From assembly GCA_044892505.1 (NCBI GenBank), contig CM097882.1, positions 294,066,001-294,130,000 on the forward strand: 64,000 nt of DNA. The letters run 5' to 3'. The notes beneath the pieces were generated by a model. The model did not search any database. It was not told the origin of the DNA and saw only the letters and a program-made list of their open reading frames with translations. The stretch is from Schmidtea nova (Eukaryota). Positions 11,110 through 53,230 of this stretch are shown here, one piece after another; positions within the stretch are counted from its first letter, which is position 1; each line of letters opens with the position of its first letter. The position numbers and the translations under genes are program-made.

Positions 11110-11130
<21 letters not shown>

Positions 11131-11320
11131 TCATAATTATCTTTTTTCACCTTTGATCTTTTTTTATTATTATTATCAATAATTCTCATAATGACTATAG
11201 ATCAAAATTTTTTTTTATAAACAATAACACAATATTTCGGCACAGCCTTTATACACACTTGATAAAGGCTGTGCCGAAATATTGTGTTATTGTTTATAAA
11301 AAAAAATTTTGATCTATAGT
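11110..11320. repeat. PLE terminal (pLTR) sequence as a perfect palindrome: 59-bp arms 11194-11252 and 11262-11320, 9-nt loop
   Basis: Same sequence as the 3' end of the PLE at 53086-53230; runs into an N-gap. Confidence 0.85.
11251..11290 (+). ncRNA. Minimal type-I hammerhead ribozyme motif (U3-A8 variant), family A
   Basis: ACAC-TTGATAA-A-GGC(TGT)GCC-GAAA-TAT-T-GTGT. Confidence 0.7.
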
Positions 11321-25838: not shown

Positions 25839-26862
25839 TATGTTGTAAAATAAATGTTTTTCAGTTTTATCTATCATTATTTATTGATTTTGGTTTTAAA
25901 TAAATCAATTTACTGTTAATTGAATATCTGAATGATATGAGCTGGTTAATGTCATCATTGATACTTTTTGGTACCTGTACATTTATAAATTTTGAATGTA
26001 AAATAAAATTATTTTTAAAAATCTTTACAAAAATTAAATTCTCTAATCATGTTATTCAGAAGTCCTCGTTTTATGATAGGAAAATTTCAGCATAGTAAAT
26101 TGCATTTTAAAGCTTTTTGCTTGATATAATATTACATTTCTAAAATTAGTCAATATATATCTATTTAAATAATTATGCAATCAATTATTTTTAAATGCTT
26201 GAGACATGTATTTGACTTTTAATAAAAGAATTTTTTCCAGGAAAGCAAGGAATAATTTAAGACAAGATAAAATGCACAAATCGATGTACGCATTAAGGTC
26301 GCAAAAAAATTATTATTCATGCTGTCGGATCAAGTCAAAATAAGGTTGTCTTGTAATTTCATAACGATTACATGCTTTTGTTTGTCATTAATATCTTTTA
26401 TTAAACGTATTCAACAATTGAACTGAATCATTTTTTAATATTATTTCCCATACTGCCTTTGTTGATATTGATAAAACGAACATTTACATATCAAATTTTT
26501 TCAATTTCAAAATAAATTTGATACATGTGATTTATTAAGTTAAAGTTCTATGACATGCTATAATAAACGTATCTGATTGATCATTTTCATTTTGTTGATA
26601 TTAAAGGCACATTTTTAACTGAAAATGTATTATTTTTGAATACGTTTATTTGGATTTGTTTTGAAGGAAAGAAAAATGGATGTAATTTTTGTTTAAACGC
26701 ATCAAAATTTAAATATACACAAAAAGAGGATAATTTAAGGCACATGAAAATACAAAAGCATTAGGCACAAAATAGCACAAAAGTATATAGAATATTAAAG
26801 CGCAAATAGTAGTAATATGAACCGCATTCTATAAGTCGGTCCAGTTAGGGAGAAAACGGTAG

Positions 26863-27420
26863 ATGGACAAACTTATGAGTCATGGATGGACGACAGAAAA
26901 ATTAAAAGAACAGCTATTGGTATATTGTTCCGTGGAAAAGAAGCTGATAATGAAATTATGCGCAGATGAAATCGGAGGTACTGAAAAAATAAAAAAGAAG
27001 ATCAATAAATTACACAAAGTTAGACAAATGAGCGAAGAGATTTACACGGAAAAGGAAAGAATACCCGAAGGAGAGATAAATAGAAGCTACAAAGATGTCA
27101 CCATAAAAAATAATAGATATGTCGAACCGGAAAATAGAACCAGAAGATATAGAGAGAACGTAACTCTAGATAATAATATTATAAAATGCTTTTGTTGCGG
27201 ACCAAGGCCATGTAGAAAGGGAATGTCAAAATAAACAATTAATAAGCATCGAGTGTTATGGATGTGGACAACAGGGGCATACCCAGATAGAGTGTCCAAA
27301 TAGGCAGCGAAGAATTATTACATATTATGCATGTAGAAAACAAGGACATATTCAGAGAGATTGCCTGAAAAGACAAAAAAATCGTTACATATTATGCATG
27401 TGGAGTAGAAGGACACGTTA
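26863..27420 (+). pseudogene. Gag-like fragment with about four tandem CCHC knuckles, frameshifted and truncated
   Basis: CFCCG/QGHVEREC, CYGCGQQGHTQIEC, YYACRKQGHIQRDC, YACGVEGH; ends at the pLTR palindrome. Confidence 0.75.
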
Positions 27421-27429
27421 TATATTCCT

Positions 27430-27469
27430 CACAATATATTTCGAGAAATTAATTCTCTTCATCAGGTGC
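27430..27469 (-). ncRNA. Minimal type-I hammerhead ribozyme motif, family B
   Basis: Minus strand GCAC-CTGATGA-A-GAGAA(TTAAT)TTCTC-GAAA-TATAT-T-GTG. Confidence 0.8.
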
Positions 27470-28298
27470 TACCCAATCTTACATTCAACTATAAATCAAA
27501 TAAATCGATTTTTCAAACAAATTAATATTAATTTTTAAAATAAAATACATATTATAAATTCCATATATCAGTCAAAAAATTTAAAACAATTAAAAATTTT
27601 TTAATTTAAATTAATTAATCTTAAAAATATAATATTCTTTTTATTACAAAAAAATATTTTTTTAAGAATATATTATAAATATTTCTATATTTATAAACAA
27701 CAGAATGACTGAAAACAAAATCCACAATCCTCAATTGAAAATGTTCTAATACTCGAGTACAGAAAAGTCGGTCAGTCTTGTCAAAAGTATGTGGCATTTC
27801 GCCCATGACGTTTGAAAAATTAAACGAGTATAGAACACAAATCAAAAGAAGAAAATAAACATCATCAACAATCACATCAGTTAATTTACTTAAATCACAA
27901 AAAATGAGGCAAACAAACGCACCCAAAATTCTTACACTCACATATTCACAAACATCGACATGACTGAAAACAACACTACATCCCATTAATTTTTCAAACG
28001 TCTTTTCTGTACTCGAGTATTAGAACATTTTCAATTGAGGATTGTGGATTTTGTTTTCAGTCATTCTGTTATTTATAAATATGGAAATATTTATGATATA
28101 TTCTTAAAAAATATTTTTTTGTAATAAAAAGAATATTATATTTTTAAGATTAATTTATTTAAATTAAAAAAATTTTAATTGTTTTAAATTTTTTGACTGA
28201 TATATAGAATTAATAATATATATATATTTTTAAAAATTAATATTAATTTGTTTGAAAAATCGATTTATTTGATTTATAGTTGAATGTAAGATTGGGCA

Positions 28299-28339
28299 GC
28301 ACCTGATGAAGAGAATTAAGTTCTCGAAATATATTGTGC
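28299..28339 (+). ncRNA. Minimal type-I hammerhead ribozyme motif, family B
   Basis: GCAC-CTGATGA-A-GAGAA(TTAAG)TTCTC-GAAA-TATAT-T-GTGC; canonical core, 5-bp stem II, 4-bp stem I; predicted cut after 28335. Confidence 0.85.
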
Positions 28340-28379
28340 AAAATATATATTTGGATTGGCGTTTGTTTTTAATTATTTT

Positions 28380-28468
28380 AGTGCCATGTTTGTTGAGTTA
28401 TGTAATAATAATAATAATGGTAATAATGATATTATTAATAATGATAATAATAAAAAAATATTAATTAT

Positions 28469-28509
<41 letters not shown>

Positions 28510-29521
28510 TAATAATGAAAATAATAATGAAAATAATAATAAGAATTGTTGGGCGAAAACTGCAAATTGTTTAAATGAAGCGGTAACACAACAAGTAGAG
28601 AGCGCGCAAGATTCTAATTTGACCAAAGCATTAAGTAAAATCGAAGTAGTTAAGTGAAAACCCACCTAAATATTAAAGTGGACCAAAGTGCATTACCAAG
28701 TCAAGAGCGCGCAAGACTCTAATCTAAAGTCCTTTAATCAAAACATCAAGGAAAAATCAAAATGGTTAAAAAAAGCACGTCTAAAAGGCTTGAATAGACA
28801 AAAAACACATCGAATATGCACGTGGAGAACGCGTTCATGATATAAAACCTCGGTTGTGGAAATATAGCATGTTTGGAGAAGGAAGATTACGATTTTATCT
28901 TAAAAATTCGTAAAAATATAAAAGAAAATGATTTTGATTGAAATTGCAACAAATTAAATCAAATTAGAATAAACTTCAAAAGTAAAATTTTGGATTAAAA
29001 AGAAATTATTTAAAGTTTTATGAAAGTTTGATGTAAAATTATTAATTTAGTTTAACGGAAAATTGTTGAAATTAATTTCAAGAAAATTAGAAACTCCTTC
29101 TTGAACGATTTGTTTTAATACCTCAATGGAAATAAAAATGCAGAAAAATTTATATAAATACCGCCATTAAAATGGAGAGAATTAGCAAATGCTATTTTGC
29201 AAAAGATTTGCGGAGGAATTTTTTTGCTAAAAATTTTGAGGTTTTTAGCAGGGAAATTTTAACAAAGAGTCTCTTACTACTGATATACCAGTGTGACTCT
29301 ACCAGAATATTACGAAAGAAGATTATTTGTGGTCATGAATCGAATCATTCGTAAGAAACTTGATTTTGTTTCCTAATTATAAAATCCCGAGAAATCATGC
29401 CCTCGCTACCCGGCCTAAGTATTTTTCTTTATTTTAACCTTAGTCTATGTGTACTATATGATATTTTATGTATTCTTTTATGAAAATTATAATTTTTTAT
29501 ATTCATTTTATTGTTATTTAT

Positions 29522-44512: not shown

Positions 44513-44638
44513 TGACTTTAACATTTAAAAAATCATAATAATGCTAAGTTTTGAGTGCAGTATTTTTTCATATTAAAAGTGCTTTTAATATCAATAATTT
44601 CCATAAGACTATATATCAAAAATTTATTTTAAACAAGT

Positions 44639-44673
44639 ACACAATATTTCGGCACAACCCTTTATCGAGTGTG
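44639..44673 (-). ncRNA. Degenerate hammerhead motif, family A, in an isolated pLTR fragment
   Basis: Minus strand CACAC-TCGATAA-AG-GGT(TGT)GCC-GAAA-TAT-T-GTGT; U4C change; flank matches the family-A pLTR. Confidence 0.5.
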
Positions 44674-49534: not shown

Positions 49535-51049
49535 TACTATATTATAGAATATTGTATGCTAAATCTTGCTACATAAATATATTTTAATAACTATTTTTAT
49601 TTGGACGCAAAAGTTAAATCTTTGAAAATCAATTATTTGAAAAATATTTACACGTAGCCTTGTAGAGTGTTTGATTCTGAGTTGAATCATATTTGATTAA
49701 GTTGAAAAATATTTCATCTACATGGAAAAAACTCAATGTGTACATAGTGAAAAATTATAAAATCCATTATTTTTAATAAAGATAAATGTCATCTTGTAGA
49801 TAATTTGATGGTTGTCTAAGCCTTAGACTCTAAGGTATAAAAAATAAATTGAAAAATAGGCTTGGTTGTTTGAAAAACTAAAACTAGTGAAATTCGATAT
49901 TTCCTGTTAATACTTTTGCATCAAGTTTGCGGCGCAAATATTTTAGAGTCAAGCAATGAATTGATGACTAAAATCTGTTAAGTAAATCATTTTCTTTTAC
50001 ACAACTATTGAAGAGATACAAAAATGTTGTCAGATTAAATATTCATCTTGAAAATCTCTATATATATATTGCACAAACAATTTTTCAAAAATCTCAAACA
50101 CTCGCACTGAAGTGCGATAAAACAAAACACAAAATTGAAAGTTTGGACTCTGCACCCAAAAATAAATATTCAAATTTAAAAAGTTTTCGCGTGAGTTTTT
50201 AAGCGTGCTATATATTATCGCTAGGGACGGGGCAGTTAGGGGGCGATAATTGGCAGTGAGTTAGAAAGCTCACATCTACCTACTGATGTTGAATAATCGA
50301 GTGTTTCATAATCAAAGTTTTACCGTGTATATTTTTTACTATTGATCTATTTTCATTTTCTTTATCTTCATTTTTTTCAGATTTTAGGTCGATATATTTT
50401 GTTTTATATTAAACCCAAATATAAAGGAAAATGTTGATTTATAATACGAAAAGATATGAAAAAAGTAATAATCAGAAAAAAATAATTAAATTGATCCCAG
50501 ATATTTAAAATAAATTTATTTTCTCTTAAATTTTAATGAACCTTTTTTTAAAAATTATAGAGATTATTATTACTAGTCAAAAATGACATAAGTTTTTTAA
50601 ATATCAATTAAAAACAATTTTTCTTCTTTTAATGTTTTAATTCATATTCAACAACTCCTAATGACAATAATAATATCGGATTCAGAGTCCAAACGATAAA
50701 TCTTTTATAATTCGTGTACCATCTTTCAGCGTTACTGACAGTTTGGATTTTTTAATTCAATATTATTTACTAAATTAATAAATAATTTAAAAAAAATTTA
50801 GATATTACTTATAATAATCAATAGAAAATCATTCAGCGTTACAGCGTCATTAATATANNNNNNNNNNNNNNNNNNNNNNNNNNNNNNNNNNNNNNNNNNN
50901 NNNNNNNNNNNNNNNNNNNNNNNNNNNNNNNNNNNNNNNNNNNNNNNNNNNNNNNNNNNNNNNNNNNNNNNNNNNNNNNNNNNNNNNNNNNNNNNNNNNN
51001 NNNNNNNNNNNNNNNNNNNNNNNNNNNNNNNNNNNNNNNNNNNNNNNNA

Positions 51050-53219
51050 TCCACCAAATCTTCAAGTTTAGCTGAAAAGCACAATCATCTTCAGGATCCA
51101 AATCGTAGAACATATCCAAATATGCCTGTCTTTTCGACTGAACTTGAAGACAAAATCAGATTTTTAGAAATTAAAGTCAAAACTTTAGTCAAAGAACAAA
51201 TTATCTTTCTTGAAAAACATTGCTCAACACAAAATTCTTTCACTTCAAACATAAATAAAATTAAGAATTCGAAAAGACTTCACAATTCTTCCATCAGATA
51301 AAACCAATCGACTAATTGCCCTTGACACAGAACAATACAATACTCTATTTGAAGAACATCTCTCGAACTATGAACGATAAACAAAATAATCTTACCTGCA
51401 TCGACTCAGATTTTATACAATAAGAAACTGTCAACACTTGAAAATAAACAAAGCAACCTTCAAATCAAAGATTTACTTTTAAAATGCAACTGAAATGAGC
51501 CCTTACCTAGTAATATGACTATGTTACCTAAAGACCACAAAAGTCCTTTAAAAGGCAGATCTCTTGTCCGCTGTTGACACTCCTTCCACAAAACATTCTA
51601 AAGTTCTTTCAGAAGTCCTAAAAACACTTTTGCCTTTGGTTCCTTGTCATTTTAAAAACACAACTGAATTCGTCTCCGAAATTACAAATACGACTATTCC
51701 GTTAAACGCAGAACAACAGTACTTCTGGGGATCTCTTGATGTTTCCAATCTTTACGGATCTATTTCTCTTCACGGAGACAATAATATTTTTGATATCGCA
51801 GCTTCTTTCTTTGAAACTCATAAAGCCAATACTGACCTCGCAGACTTAACTAAACAAGACTTTTTAGAACTTCTAAAATTAGCAATAAATTCAGGTACTG
51901 TCATAATTAAAGAAAAACCATTCAAACAAATTCATGGATTAGCCATGGGTAACAACCTTTCTCCCATCTTAGCCATCTTCTACATGAACTTTATAGAATC
52001 TAAGATCATATCTTTTTTGGGGACAAAATACTTTTCTGGAAACGATACATCGATGACATCTTCATAGTCTCCACAATCCCTCTCAATCAAATCCTATCAC
52101 ACACAAATTCTACTAACACCAACATACAATTCACTTTTGAAACACCGAACACAGAAGGTAAAATACCGTTTTTAGATACCATGGTAAGTTTCATAAAAGG
52201 CCAAGATACACTAAATGCAAACACCGAGCTATATTCTAAAAGTTTACATAGTGGTCATATCCTCCCATGGAAAAGCCACGTTCCACTTCAACGCAAAATC
52301 GCATTACTAATTGGAGAAAGAAAAAGAGCCATAAGAAACTGTTCAGGCGCAAACAAAATACAAGAAACATTAGAAAACTTCAAAATACGATTCCTCCAAA
52401 ATGGATACCCTGAAGAATTTGTAAAGAAATACTTCATTAACGAACCATACCACAATAAACGCAACAATAGGAAACGCCAGAAACACAATAACAATAACAA
52501 ACACACAACATATCTAAGATTACCTTTCCTAAATGACACTACAGCCAACAAAATGACCAACATTTTTAATCAAACAGATTTGCCTATCCACATCCGTCCA
52601 ACGTTCATAACTTCCGCACCGTTAAAATTACAACTCCGAAAGCCACCAATTTCCAACATCTCCAAACATAAATGTCTTTGCCGTTCCACAACCCGATGCT
52701 TTTGCTTTTCCAAAAATATAGTATATAAACTTTATTGTCAAAAAAGTGACGCTACTTACATAAGAGAAACACATAGAACTTTTCGCACCCAACTTAATGA
52801 ACACACTAAAAACAAAACCAGTAATTATTATGAACACTGGGAGAAAGTACATAAAACAACTCCATCTATAGAAGAAACAAAATGCCAGATTCTACAAGAG
52901 GGATTCAAAAATTCATTACAAAGATTAGCTTCCGAAACTTTTTACATAAAAAAATACAAACCGTCCATCAACATTCAATTCGCACAAAAAAATTAAAATA
53001 AATTTTAATCATCCAATAAAATCATTATAAAATATTAAAAAATAATTAAGGTTACTATTTAGGATTAAGTTAATATAACGATTGAAATACACACTTGATA
53101 AAGGCTGTGCCGAAATATTGTGTTATTGTTTATAAAAAATTTTGATCTATAGTCATCATTATGAGAATTATTGATAATTATAATAAAAAAAGATCAAAGG
53201 TGAAAAAAGATAATTATGA

Positions 53220-53230
<11 letters not shown>
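51050..53230 (+). mobile_element. Penelope-like retroelement: RT plus GIY-YIG endonuclease (frameshifted), 3' pLTR and (ATT)n tail; 5' end in a gap
   Basis: DKTNRLIALD; LPKDHK; SLDVSNLY; GLAMGNNLSP; RYIDDIF (shifted frame at ~52030); PFLD; NIVYKLYC...YIRET.RTF...EH. Confidence 0.93.
53086..53127 (+). ncRNA. Minimal type-I hammerhead ribozyme motif (U3-A8 variant), family A, in the PLE 3' pLTR
   Basis: AATA(C)ACAC-TTGATAA-A-GGC(TGT)GCC-GAAA-TAT-T-GTGTTATT; 8-bp stem I with one bulge; predicted cut after 53119. Confidence 0.8.

What the first reader, a model, noticed from the sequence alone, without database searches (positions are those of the whole stretch)
27421..28350. Second hammerhead family: two outward-facing ribozymes on a 350-bp inverted pLTR pair
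Seen: both arms end in GCAC-CUGAUGA-A-GAGAA/loop/UUCUC-GAAA-UAUAU-U-GUG. The two motifs differ only in the stem-II loop and the outer stem-I position. Like family A they use CAC/GUG stem I, an AU-palindrome stem III and an AUU triplet, but stem II is unrelated and C3-G8 is canonical, giving covariation between families in one window. No RT lies between the arms. Inference: a non-autonomous, retrozyme-like PLE derivative.
Basis: partly seen in the sequence, partly recalled or inferred. Interest (0 to 1): 0.72.

Follow-up and report, generated by a model that had tools for sequence, protein, structure and literature searches.

The report
Head-to-head hammerhead retroelement twin
Two truncated copies of a very abundant 963-base repeat that carries a minimal hammerhead ribozyme motif lie head to head here; Penelope-like retroelements are known to insert this way and it is already described in flatworms, so the finding is real but ordinary.

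Summary
Two 41-nt hammerhead (HHR) motifs with a complete catalytic core face outward at 27429-27469 (-) and 28299-28339 (+), on arms about 95% alike.

The arms are not a 350-bp unit or a pLTR pair. They are two 5'-truncated copies (573 and about 410 nt) of a 962/963-nt repeat ("B"), joined at their 5' ends.

B has 6,808 exact HHR cores in this 1.25-Gb genome (reversed control: 0). It occurs as dispersed copies and as 963-nt tandem arrays, and has no RT.

Its copies carry the insertion signature of Penelope-like elements (PLEs):
- scattered 5' ends;
- two 3'-end classes about 32 nt apart (the PLE "tail");
- (AAT)n targets;
- outward-facing twins only (21 vs 0).

The RT/GIY-YIG PLE of this genome ("A", U3-A8 hammerhead) shows the same signature. 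One twin pairs an A arm with a B arm.

Descent from a PLE is not shown and cleavage is untested.

Minimal PLE hammerheads, opposite-strand pairs and inverted truncated copies were published in 2014-2024. This scan reached the same reading on other windows of this genome (s1-381105, s1-376056).

One thing stays unexplained: an open frame of 218-298 codons that starts in the CUGAUGA box.

The parts
27419..27991 (-). Left copy of repeat B, 5'-truncated. It covers unit positions 401 to 962 plus 14 nt past the cut site. Its 3' end is unusually short (+14) and abuts a truncated gag-like retroelement.
   Evidence: BLAST against the reference unit L032:2123-3084
27429..27469 (-). Left minimal hammerhead motif. 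Stem I has 3 bp plus a mismatch at 27429. Stem II is GAGAA/UUCUC with loop UUAAU. Predicted cut between 27433 and 27432.
   Evidence: Sequence reading and motif scan
27992..27998 (.). 7-nt filler at the head-to-head junction of the two 5' ends.
   Evidence: Gap between the two BLAST matches. Other twins abut within 0-13 nt.
27999..28408 (+). Right copy of repeat B, 5'-truncated. It covers unit position 622 through the HHR to about +69/+73, the long-type 3' end.
28299..28339 (+). Right minimal hammerhead motif with intact 4-bp stem I and 5-bp stem II (loop UUAAG). Predicted cut between 28335 and 28336.
   Evidence: The motif fits a helix I + II fold of -6.6 kcal/mol.
28374..28408 (+). About 32-35-nt 'tail': the segment between the short-type 3' end (...TTTTTAAT, +38) and the long-type 3' end (+69/73). 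It is present on this arm only.
   Evidence: 3'-end classes among 42 copies. The PLE tail is described in PMC8557442 and PMC11167929.
28409..28540 (.). AAT/ATA-type microsatellite-rich flank, the usual target context of families B and A.

Best explanation
The locus is a 'twin' insertion of a non-autonomous retroelement. Its two arms are copies of a 962/963-nt repeat (B) that has no reverse transcriptase and carries one minimal type-I hammerhead per unit.

Inferred mechanism: B RNA is transcribed from tandem or partly tandem copies. A Penelope-like RT/GIY-YIG enzyme then copies it into DNA. That enzyme cuts both strands at AAT/ATT-rich DNA and primes on both strands, starting at one of two internal sites about 38-41 or 70-73 nt downstream of the hammerhead cut site. 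Each cDNA stops early, so two 5'-truncated copies meet head to head with their hammerheads at the outer ends.

The hammerhead has a palindromic AUAUAU in place of helix III. If it cuts, it would do so as a dimer or with protein help, trimming multimeric RNA to unit length.

Shown here: the anatomy, the copy number, the insertion signature, and its identity with that of the genome's RT-encoding PLE family A.

Inferred: trans-mobilisation, with family A as the best candidate partner (about even odds), and any RNA cleavage.
For: Copy number and arrangement:
- The HHR core has 6,808 exact copies against 0 in the control. Among the first 100 listed, 21 close pairs are (-,+) outward-facing and none are (+,-). 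Direct neighbours are spaced 952-964 nt, with one at 867.
- The unit is 962 nt between cut sites in L032. Some copies exceed one unit (L010, L032, L033), and L003 holds a partial plus a longer copy in tandem.
- About two thirds of the 150 best hits lie at multiples of 963 nt within C2:381.00-382.15 Mb.

Insertion signature of B:
- 5' ends are scattered over the unit. 3' ends cluster at about +38-45 and about +72-74: 23 short, 12 long, 7 other.
- 18 of 35 classified ends run straight into four or more AAT/ATT units, against 0.8% of window positions.
- Twin 5' ends abut within 0-13 nt.

The same signature in family A:
- Family A has an 869-aa ORF with RVT_1 and GIY-YIG domains and 41,346 exact HHR cores.
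- Its 3' ends fall at +64-69 and +101-105, with (AAT)n flanks and head-to-head twins.

Direct links between A and B:
- L036 holds an A(-)/B(+) head-to-head twin inside one (AAT)n tract, with no microsatellite between the arms.
- L004 holds an internal A fragment fused to a 5'-truncated B copy, as a template switch would produce.

Two templates per twin: in 8 of 11 twins the arms are no more alike than random copies.

The HHR itself: it is the least variable 41-nt stretch of the 3' 375 nt, at 1.7% against 5.7% (Mann-Whitney p=0.002).

Literature:
- A purified PLE enzyme cuts and extends both strands, prefers 5'-ATT-3', and starts reverse transcription at two internal sites that bracket the 'tail' (PMC11167929).
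- PLE insertions show 5' truncation, partial tandems, an adjacent inverted truncated copy and a one-sided 30-40-bp tail (PMC8557442).
- Flatworm PLE mini-hammerheads have a 4-5-bp helix I and an extra base before stem II, and pairs occur on opposite strands 100-700 bp apart (PMC4209133).
Against: - There is no RNA evidence.
- Self-cleavage is untested. Rfam hammerhead models do not score the motif.
- A and B share no sequence in the region where reverse transcription would start, so recognition of B RNA by the A enzyme is unexplained.
- There is only one hybrid twin and one chimera in about 60 loci. Two independent hits in one microsatellite cannot be excluded for L036.
- Copies whose 5' end sits at the predicted cut site are not enriched: at most about 10 of 91 pattern hits have unrelated upstream sequence, roughly what uniform truncation predicts. 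The genome therefore holds no fossil trace of cleavage.
- No empty site could be reconstructed for this locus. The two flanks belong to different repeat families, and the left arm lacks a normal 3' end.
Confidence: 0.8

Rival explanations
1. B is moved by PLE-type enzymes, but the hammerhead does not act as a ribozyme in its life cycle. The motif would be kept because it is part of the RNA structure the enzyme binds near the reverse-transcription start, and unprocessed multimeric RNA would be the template.
For: - 5' ends are not enriched at the predicted cut site.
- For the Anolis PLE, catalytic HHR mutants did not change insertion in vitro. Unprocessed RNA was the main substrate, no RNA-seq reads ended at the cut site, and the HHR cut only when protein was present (PMC11167929).
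- Metazoan PLE mini-hammerheads cut poorly in vitro (PMC4209133).
Against: - All catalytic-core positions are intact in 6,808 copies.
- The HHR is the most conserved stretch of the unit's 3' part.
- Five dispersed B copies carry the double change U3-A8, where about 0.7 would be expected if each single change runs at the 1% measured at the stem-II pair. The single changes at positions 3 and 8 were not counted.
- A circular or multimeric template would also leave no 5'-end signal.
Confidence: 0.3
2. B is mobilised by its own rare RT-encoding master or by another PLE family, not by family A.
For: - A and B share no sequence downstream of the cut site, where reverse transcription starts.
- B copies in the sample are older (about 5% variable sites) than A copies (96-99% identity).
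Against: - Among the first 100 B hammerheads, only one same-strand pair lies at PLE-like spacing (4,074 nt), and the largest open frame between them (286 aa) has no RT match; the rest of the interval has no ORF over 83 aa and was not scanned.
- The A/B hybrid twin and the A-B chimera.
- Identical target and end-class behaviour.
- The search for other PLE families was swamped by family A (23,946 candidates), so absence is not shown.
Confidence: 0.25
3. The inverted pair is a DNA-level palindrome: a fold-back duplication, or a MITE-like DNA transposon with terminal inverted repeats.
For: 351-nt arms at about 95% identity with a short spacer look like a fold-back element.
Against: - The arms are of unequal length and are 5'-truncated at different unit positions (401 and 622).
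- They are no closer to each other than to random copies: 63% of comparisons with other copies are at least as similar.
- In other twins the arms vary freely in length.
- Orientation is always outward-facing, with retroelement-type 3' ends in microsatellites.
- The same unit forms head-to-tail arrays.
Confidence: 0.03
4. B is simply satellite DNA that spreads by recombination or extrachromosomal DNA circles, with a chance or relic hammerhead.
For: A span of about 1.15 Mb on C2 holds hits at multiples of 963 nt.
Against: - By extrapolation from the first 25.5 Mb of C1, thousands of copies are dispersed and 5'-truncated.
- They have two fixed 3'-end classes in (AAT)n and strictly outward-facing twins. 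That is a reverse-transcription signature, not a recombination one.
Confidence: 0.05

Closest known systems
Minimal hammerheads (min-HHR) of metazoan Penelope-like elements, first described in Schistosoma mansoni (Cervera & de la Pena 2014, PMC4209133)
   Same: - Type-I topology with a 4-bp helix I.
- An unpaired base between A9 and G10.1, and a G10.1-C11.1 pair.
- A palindromic 15.2-16.2 segment in place of helix III, predicted to act as a dimer.
- Thousands of copies, mostly solo. Pairs occur on opposite strands 100-700 bp apart.
- A U3-A8 sister variant exists in the same genome.
   Different: - Helix II is 5 bp with a 5-nt loop, against 7-8 bp in the main Schistosoma families.
- The carrier is a 963-nt unit without RT that also forms long tandem arrays.
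PLE insertion architecture and 'tail' (Craig et al. 2021, PMC8557442; Frangieh et al. 2024, PMC11167929)
   Same: - 5' truncation and partial tandems.
- An abutting inverted 5'-truncated copy.
- Two 3'-end classes about 32 nt apart, usually one of each in a twin.
- An ATT/AAT target.
- The hammerhead lies just upstream of the reverse-transcription start sites.
- An open frame starts inside the hammerhead, as in the Anolis PLE.
   Different: B has no RT/GIY-YIG ORF. The frame that starts in the hammerhead matches no known protein.
Non-LTR retrozymes of animals (Cervera & de la Pena 2020, PMC7229834; Li, Clavereau & Pollet 2026, bioRxiv 10.64898/2026.07.22.740005)
   Same: - Tandem repeats with one type-I hammerhead per unit.
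- Non-autonomous.
- Proposed to depend on PLEs.
- Said to occur in platyhelminths.
   Different: - The unit is 963 nt, against about 170-400 nt.
- The hammerhead is the stripped-down PLE type, not the canonical loop-loop type.
- Circular RNA is not shown here.
- Dispersed twins outnumber arrays.
Sm-alpha / Sj-alpha SINE-like hammerhead elements of schistosomes (Ferbeyre et al. 1998; Laha et al. 2000; cited in PMC6765202 and PMC8490949)
   Same: A short, highly repeated flatworm retroposon with no RT that carries a hammerhead.
   Different: Those carry a canonical, efficiently cleaving hammerhead, and the review's schematic shows a promoter followed by the hammerhead. Neither feature was found or tested in B.
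Newt satellite 2 hammerhead (Epstein & Gall 1987; Forster et al. 1988; as summarised in PMC7229834)
   Same: A tandem repeat whose hammerhead has a one-pair helix III with a palindromic loop and works as a dimer.
   Different: It is a vertebrate repeat of about 330 bp. A PLE-type twin signature is not described for it in the sources read.

Membership tests
Hammerhead ribozyme, PLE minimal type (min-HHR) | Catalytic core: C3 U4 G5 A6 N7 G8 A9 ... G12 A13 A14 ... U16.1 H17 | tested here: met
   CUGAUGA ... GAAA ... U-U|G is present in both copies. There are 6,808 exact genomic copies against 0 in the control.
Hammerhead ribozyme, PLE minimal type (min-HHR) | Helices I and II base-paired, open helix I (type I), G10.1-C11.1 closing pair | tested here: met
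   Helix I is GCAC/GUGC (4 bp; 3 bp in the left copy). Helix II is GAGAA/UUCUC, starting with G-C. The fold evaluates to -6.6 kcal/mol.
Hammerhead ribozyme, PLE minimal type (min-HHR) | Unpaired nucleotide between A9 and G10.1, and a palindromic 15.2-16.2 segment replacing helix III | tested here: met
   There is an extra A after CUGAUGA. A-UAUA-U is self-complementary, and the two-strand duplex scores -4.8 kcal/mol. The features are as listed in PMC4209133.
Hammerhead ribozyme, PLE minimal type (min-HHR) | Compensatory changes in the stems or the 3-8 pair within the family | tested here: inconclusive
   Stem II pair 3, G-C to A-U: 2 double variants against 0.68 expected (68 x 68 / 6,808). U3-A8 in the B scaffold: 5 dispersed copies against about 0.7 expected, but the single changes at positions 3 and 8 were not counted.
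Hammerhead ribozyme, PLE minimal type (min-HHR) | Match to curated hammerhead covariance models (Rfam) | tested here: not met
   No hammerhead family was reported at gathering score in the window or at E<=10 in 27300-28500. I infer the missing helix III is the reason.
Hammerhead ribozyme, PLE minimal type (min-HHR) | Site-specific self-cleavage | not testable with these tools
   This needs transcription and cleavage assays. The genomic proxy, 5' ends at the cut site, showed no enrichment.
Penelope-like element (autonomous) | A single ORF with a telomerase-like RT and a GIY-YIG endonuclease | tested here: not met
   Unit B has no such ORF. Its open frame has no Pfam hit and no similarity to the family A protein. 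Family A does have RVT_1 + GIY-YIG.
PLE-mediated insertion (signature) | 5' truncation, partial tandems, and an adjacent inverted 5'-truncated copy | tested here: met
   5' ends are scattered. Some copies exceed one unit. Outward-facing pairs number 21 against 0 inward-facing, and their 5' ends abut within 0-13 nt.
PLE-mediated insertion (signature) | An optional 30-40-bp tail giving two 3'-end classes, and an AT-rich/ATT target | tested here: met
   3' ends fall at about +38-45 and about +72-74. 51% run directly into AAT/ATT repeats against a 0.8% background. Family A behaves the same way.
Non-LTR retrozyme | Head-to-tail tandem repeats, each with a type-I hammerhead and no coding capacity for RT | tested here: met
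   Hits lie at 963-nt spacing, including a span of about 1.15 Mb on C2. L032 holds three hammerheads, 867 and 962 nt apart.
Non-LTR retrozyme | Small unit (about 170-400 nt) with a canonical hammerhead showing loop-loop contacts | tested here: not met
   The unit is 962/963 nt, and the hammerhead is of the minimal PLE type with a 4-bp helix I.
Non-LTR retrozyme | Expression as unit-length circular RNA | not testable with these tools
The runs that hold the sequence are of unknown kind and kept as contigs.

The most novel reading that the evidence does not exclude
B may be a PLE-architecture element in which an orphan ORF of about 280 codons occupies the place of the RT-EN gene. As in the Anolis PLE, the start codon lies inside the hammerhead: here it is the AUG of the CUGAUGA box, two codons after an in-frame stop. 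The frame then runs through the cut site. The complete ORF would therefore exist only on uncut or re-ligated (multimeric or circular, 963 = 3 x 321 nt) RNA, coupling ribozyme state to translation.
Probability: 0.08. Interest if true: 0.7.

Novelty: new member of a known kind. Interest (0 to 1): 0.3.

Why it matters
For this locus, little. It is one decaying twin among thousands, and the ribozyme type, its link to Penelope-like elements and the inverted arrangement are all in the literature.

At genome level, families A (about 41,000 hammerhead cores) and B (about 6,800) together make this flatworm a dense natural data set for how PLE enzymes choose templates and targets. B shows the 'tail', the ATT target and two-strand priming, which were worked out biochemically for one lizard PLE in 2024. 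It shows them for an RNA that shares no sequence with the enzyme's own RNA.

The A/B hybrid twin, if it proves general, would be direct genomic evidence for the proposal that animal retrozyme-like repeats ride on PLEs. The stop-free frame that begins inside the hammerhead is worth a ribosome-profiling look.

Tried and rejected
- Rfam at gathering score and at E<=10: no hammerhead family reported.
- Autonomous B master: the only PLE-spaced same-strand pair among the first 100 hammerheads (L031) has no RT match in its largest open frame. A search with the family A C-terminal ORF returned only family A.
- A versus B DNA and protein comparison: only AT-rich noise.
- Empty-site test: the left and right flanks belong to different repeat families (163 and 2,084 candidates), so no pre-insertion site could be rebuilt. 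My guess that the gag zinc-knuckle frame resumes after the insertion was wrong.
- Within-family covariation in stem II: not significant.
- 5' ends at the cut site as a fossil of cleavage: no enrichment.
- Coding test of the open frame:
  - Fixed subfamily differences fall 7/9/6 by codon position, with 5 synonymous and 17 non-synonymous.
  - The in-frame 255-nt duplicates differ 18/26/16, with 3 synonymous and 35 non-synonymous.
  - There is no Pfam hit, no homologue in the word search, and the Atlas recognition score is at the level of shuffled sequences.
  - I did not run the large representative search, because this is a side issue.
- Minimum-free-energy dimer folding is dominated by an intermolecular stem-II duplex and says nothing about the hammerhead dimer.

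Full report
**Observation.** The window is 29% G+C. It lies at C1:294,066,001-294,130,000 of a 1.25-Gb assembly.

The inverted repeat is real. Arms 27419-27770 and 27999-28349 are 94-95% alike. Each arm ends in the motif GCAC-CUGAUGA-A-GAGAA-loop-UUCUC-GAAA-UAUAU-U-GUG, on the - strand at 27469-27429 and on the + strand at 28299-28339.

The motif is not chance. The core with a free loop occurs 6,808 times in the genome, against 0 for the reversed control. Rfam reports no hammerhead here even at E<=10. I put that down to helix III being only a palindrome, though I did not test it.

**What the arms are.** The arm has at least 2,593 first-look matches, and the 40 scored are 94-100% identical. Mapping 54 copies from 34 loci onto a natural reference unit (L032:2123-3084, cut site to cut site, 962 nt) gave these results:
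- Homology continues inward of the 351-nt arm.
- 5' ends are scattered over the whole unit.
- Some copies exceed one unit.

In the window, the left copy is 27419-27991 (unit 401 to +14) and the right copy is 27999 to about 28408 (unit 622 to about +73). They are joined at their 5' ends by 7 nt. So there is no 350-bp unit and no pLTR pair. These are two truncated copies of a 963-nt repeat, which I call B.

B also forms arrays. Direct neighbours are 952-964 nt apart, with one at 867. About two thirds of the 150 best protein-level hits sit at multiples of 963 nt within C2:381.00-382.15 Mb.

**Insertion signature.** Four features stand out:
- Among the first 100 listed hammerheads, 21 close pairs are (-,+), that is outward-facing, and none are (+,-).
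- Twin 5' ends abut within 0-13 nt.
- 3' ends fall into two classes. One ends ...TTTTTAAT at about +38-41 and the other ...GTTATGTATTA at about +70-73: 23 short, 12 long and 7 other among 42 ends.
- 18 of 35 classified ends run straight into four or more AAT/ATT units, against 0.8% of window positions.

In 8 of 11 twins, including this one, the two arms are no more alike than random copies. That points to two templates rather than a fold-back.

**Link to a PLE.** The window also holds family A, the U3-A8 hammerhead noted earlier (s1-396003). Its unit is 2,761 nt, with an 869-aa ORF carrying RVT_1 and GIY-YIG domains, and it has 41,346 exact hammerhead cores.

Thirty A loci show the same architecture as B: head-to-head twins, 3' ends at +64-69 or +101-105, and (AAT)n flanks. 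Two loci tie A and B together directly:
- L036 contains an A(-)/B(+) twin inside one (AAT)n tract, with no microsatellite between the arms.
- L004 fuses an internal A fragment to a 5'-truncated B copy, as a template switch would produce.

This matches published PLE behaviour:
- 5' truncation, partial tandems, an adjacent inverted truncated copy and a one-sided 30-40-bp tail (PMC8557442).
- An enzyme that cuts and extends both strands, prefers 5'-ATT-3', and starts reverse transcription at two internal sites that bracket the tail (PMC11167929).

A and B share no sequence outside the hammerhead architecture. The choice of A as the partner is therefore an inference, at about even odds.

**The ribozyme.** The motif meets the published descriptors of flatworm PLE mini-hammerheads (PMC4209133):
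- a 4-bp helix I;
- an extra base after A9;
- a G10.1-C11.1 pair;
- a palindromic 15.2-16.2 segment.

It is the least variable 41-nt stretch in the 3' 375 nt of the unit, at 1.7% against 5.7% (p=0.002).

Within-family covariation is weak:
- The stem-II double variant occurs twice, against 0.68 expected.
- U3-A8 in the B scaffold occurs 5 times, against about 0.7 expected. The single changes at positions 3 and 8 were not counted.

Copies that begin at the predicted cut site are not enriched. This fits circular or multimeric templates. It also fits the 2024 finding that cleavage is dispensable for insertion in vitro.

**An unexplained frame.** From the cut site, the sense strand is free of stops for 218 codons. 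Counting from the AUG of the CUGAUGA box it is 230 codons, and array copies reach 261-298 of 321 codons. The other two sense frames have 15 and 22 stops. About 10 stops are expected from phase-specific base composition (P about 3e-5), and no shuffle out of 2,000 reached 200 codons.

Yet substitutions look neutral, and no family, homologue or protein-like signal was found. In the Anolis PLE the RT ORF also starts inside the hammerhead, so the position of this frame is PLE-like. I leave it unexplained.

**Known or new.** All of the following are published: minimal PLE hammerheads including the U3-A8 variant, pairs on opposite strands, inverted truncated copies, and the idea that animal retrozymes are passengers of PLEs (PMC4209133; PMC8557442; PMC7229834; bioRxiv 10.64898/2026.07.22.740005). 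Other agents of this scan reached the same reading for other loci of this genome (s1-381105, s1-376056).

Family B is a new member of a known kind. Its unit size, its long arrays, the hybrid twin and the open frame are new details.

**Verdict.** Interest is 0.3.

Noticed in passing
L032:2087-2776 (+); unit B positions 927 to 654: A stop-free frame of 230 codons (261-298 of 321 in array copies). It starts at the AUG of the hammerhead's CUGAUGA box and runs through the cut site. The other two sense frames have 15 and 22 stops. There is no coding signature in substitutions and no homologue.
   Followed up: partly
G000:C2:381.00-382.15 Mb; also C1:593.59 Mb, C1:180.92 Mb, C1:487.35 Mb, C2:345.58 Mb, C213: Hits to unit B lie at multiples of 963 nt (= 3 x 321) across a span of about 1.15 Mb, so B behaves as a satellite as well as a dispersed repeat.
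   Followed up: partly
L036:1301-2941: A hybrid head-to-head twin. A family A PLE copy (-, 1301-2349) and a family B copy (+, 2363-2941) are separated by 13 nt and flanked on both sides by one (AAT)n tract.
   Followed up: partly
L004:4-1908: An internal family A fragment (unit 896-1965, lacking its 3' end) is fused within 4 nt to a 5'-truncated B copy in the same orientation. It looks like a template-switch chimera.
   Followed up: partly
window 26000-27418 (+): A gag-like ORF fragment with three CCHC zinc knuckles spaced 67-69 nt apart is cut off exactly where the left B copy ends. Its family has about 163 candidates at 87-90% identity.
   Followed up: partly
window 28545-28960: A different, younger repeat family (2,084 candidates, 94-96% identity) starts about 4-9 nt into this stretch, right after the microsatellite. 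It was not identified.
   Followed up: no
window 11125-11320; 44585-44673; 51049-53225: Family A PLE pieces: a mini twin of 128 + 70 nt, a 91-nt fragment, and a 2.2-kb 5'-truncated copy with the long-type 3' end.
   Followed up: partly
unit B positions 249-404 and 504-659 (L032:2371-2526 and 2626-2781): An internal duplication offset by 255 nt (85 codons, in frame) at about 75% identity.
   Followed up: partly
genome-wide: The family A U3-A8 hammerhead core has 41,346 exact copies, about one per 30 kb. Many sit in (-,+) pairs only 40-60 nt apart.
   Followed up: no
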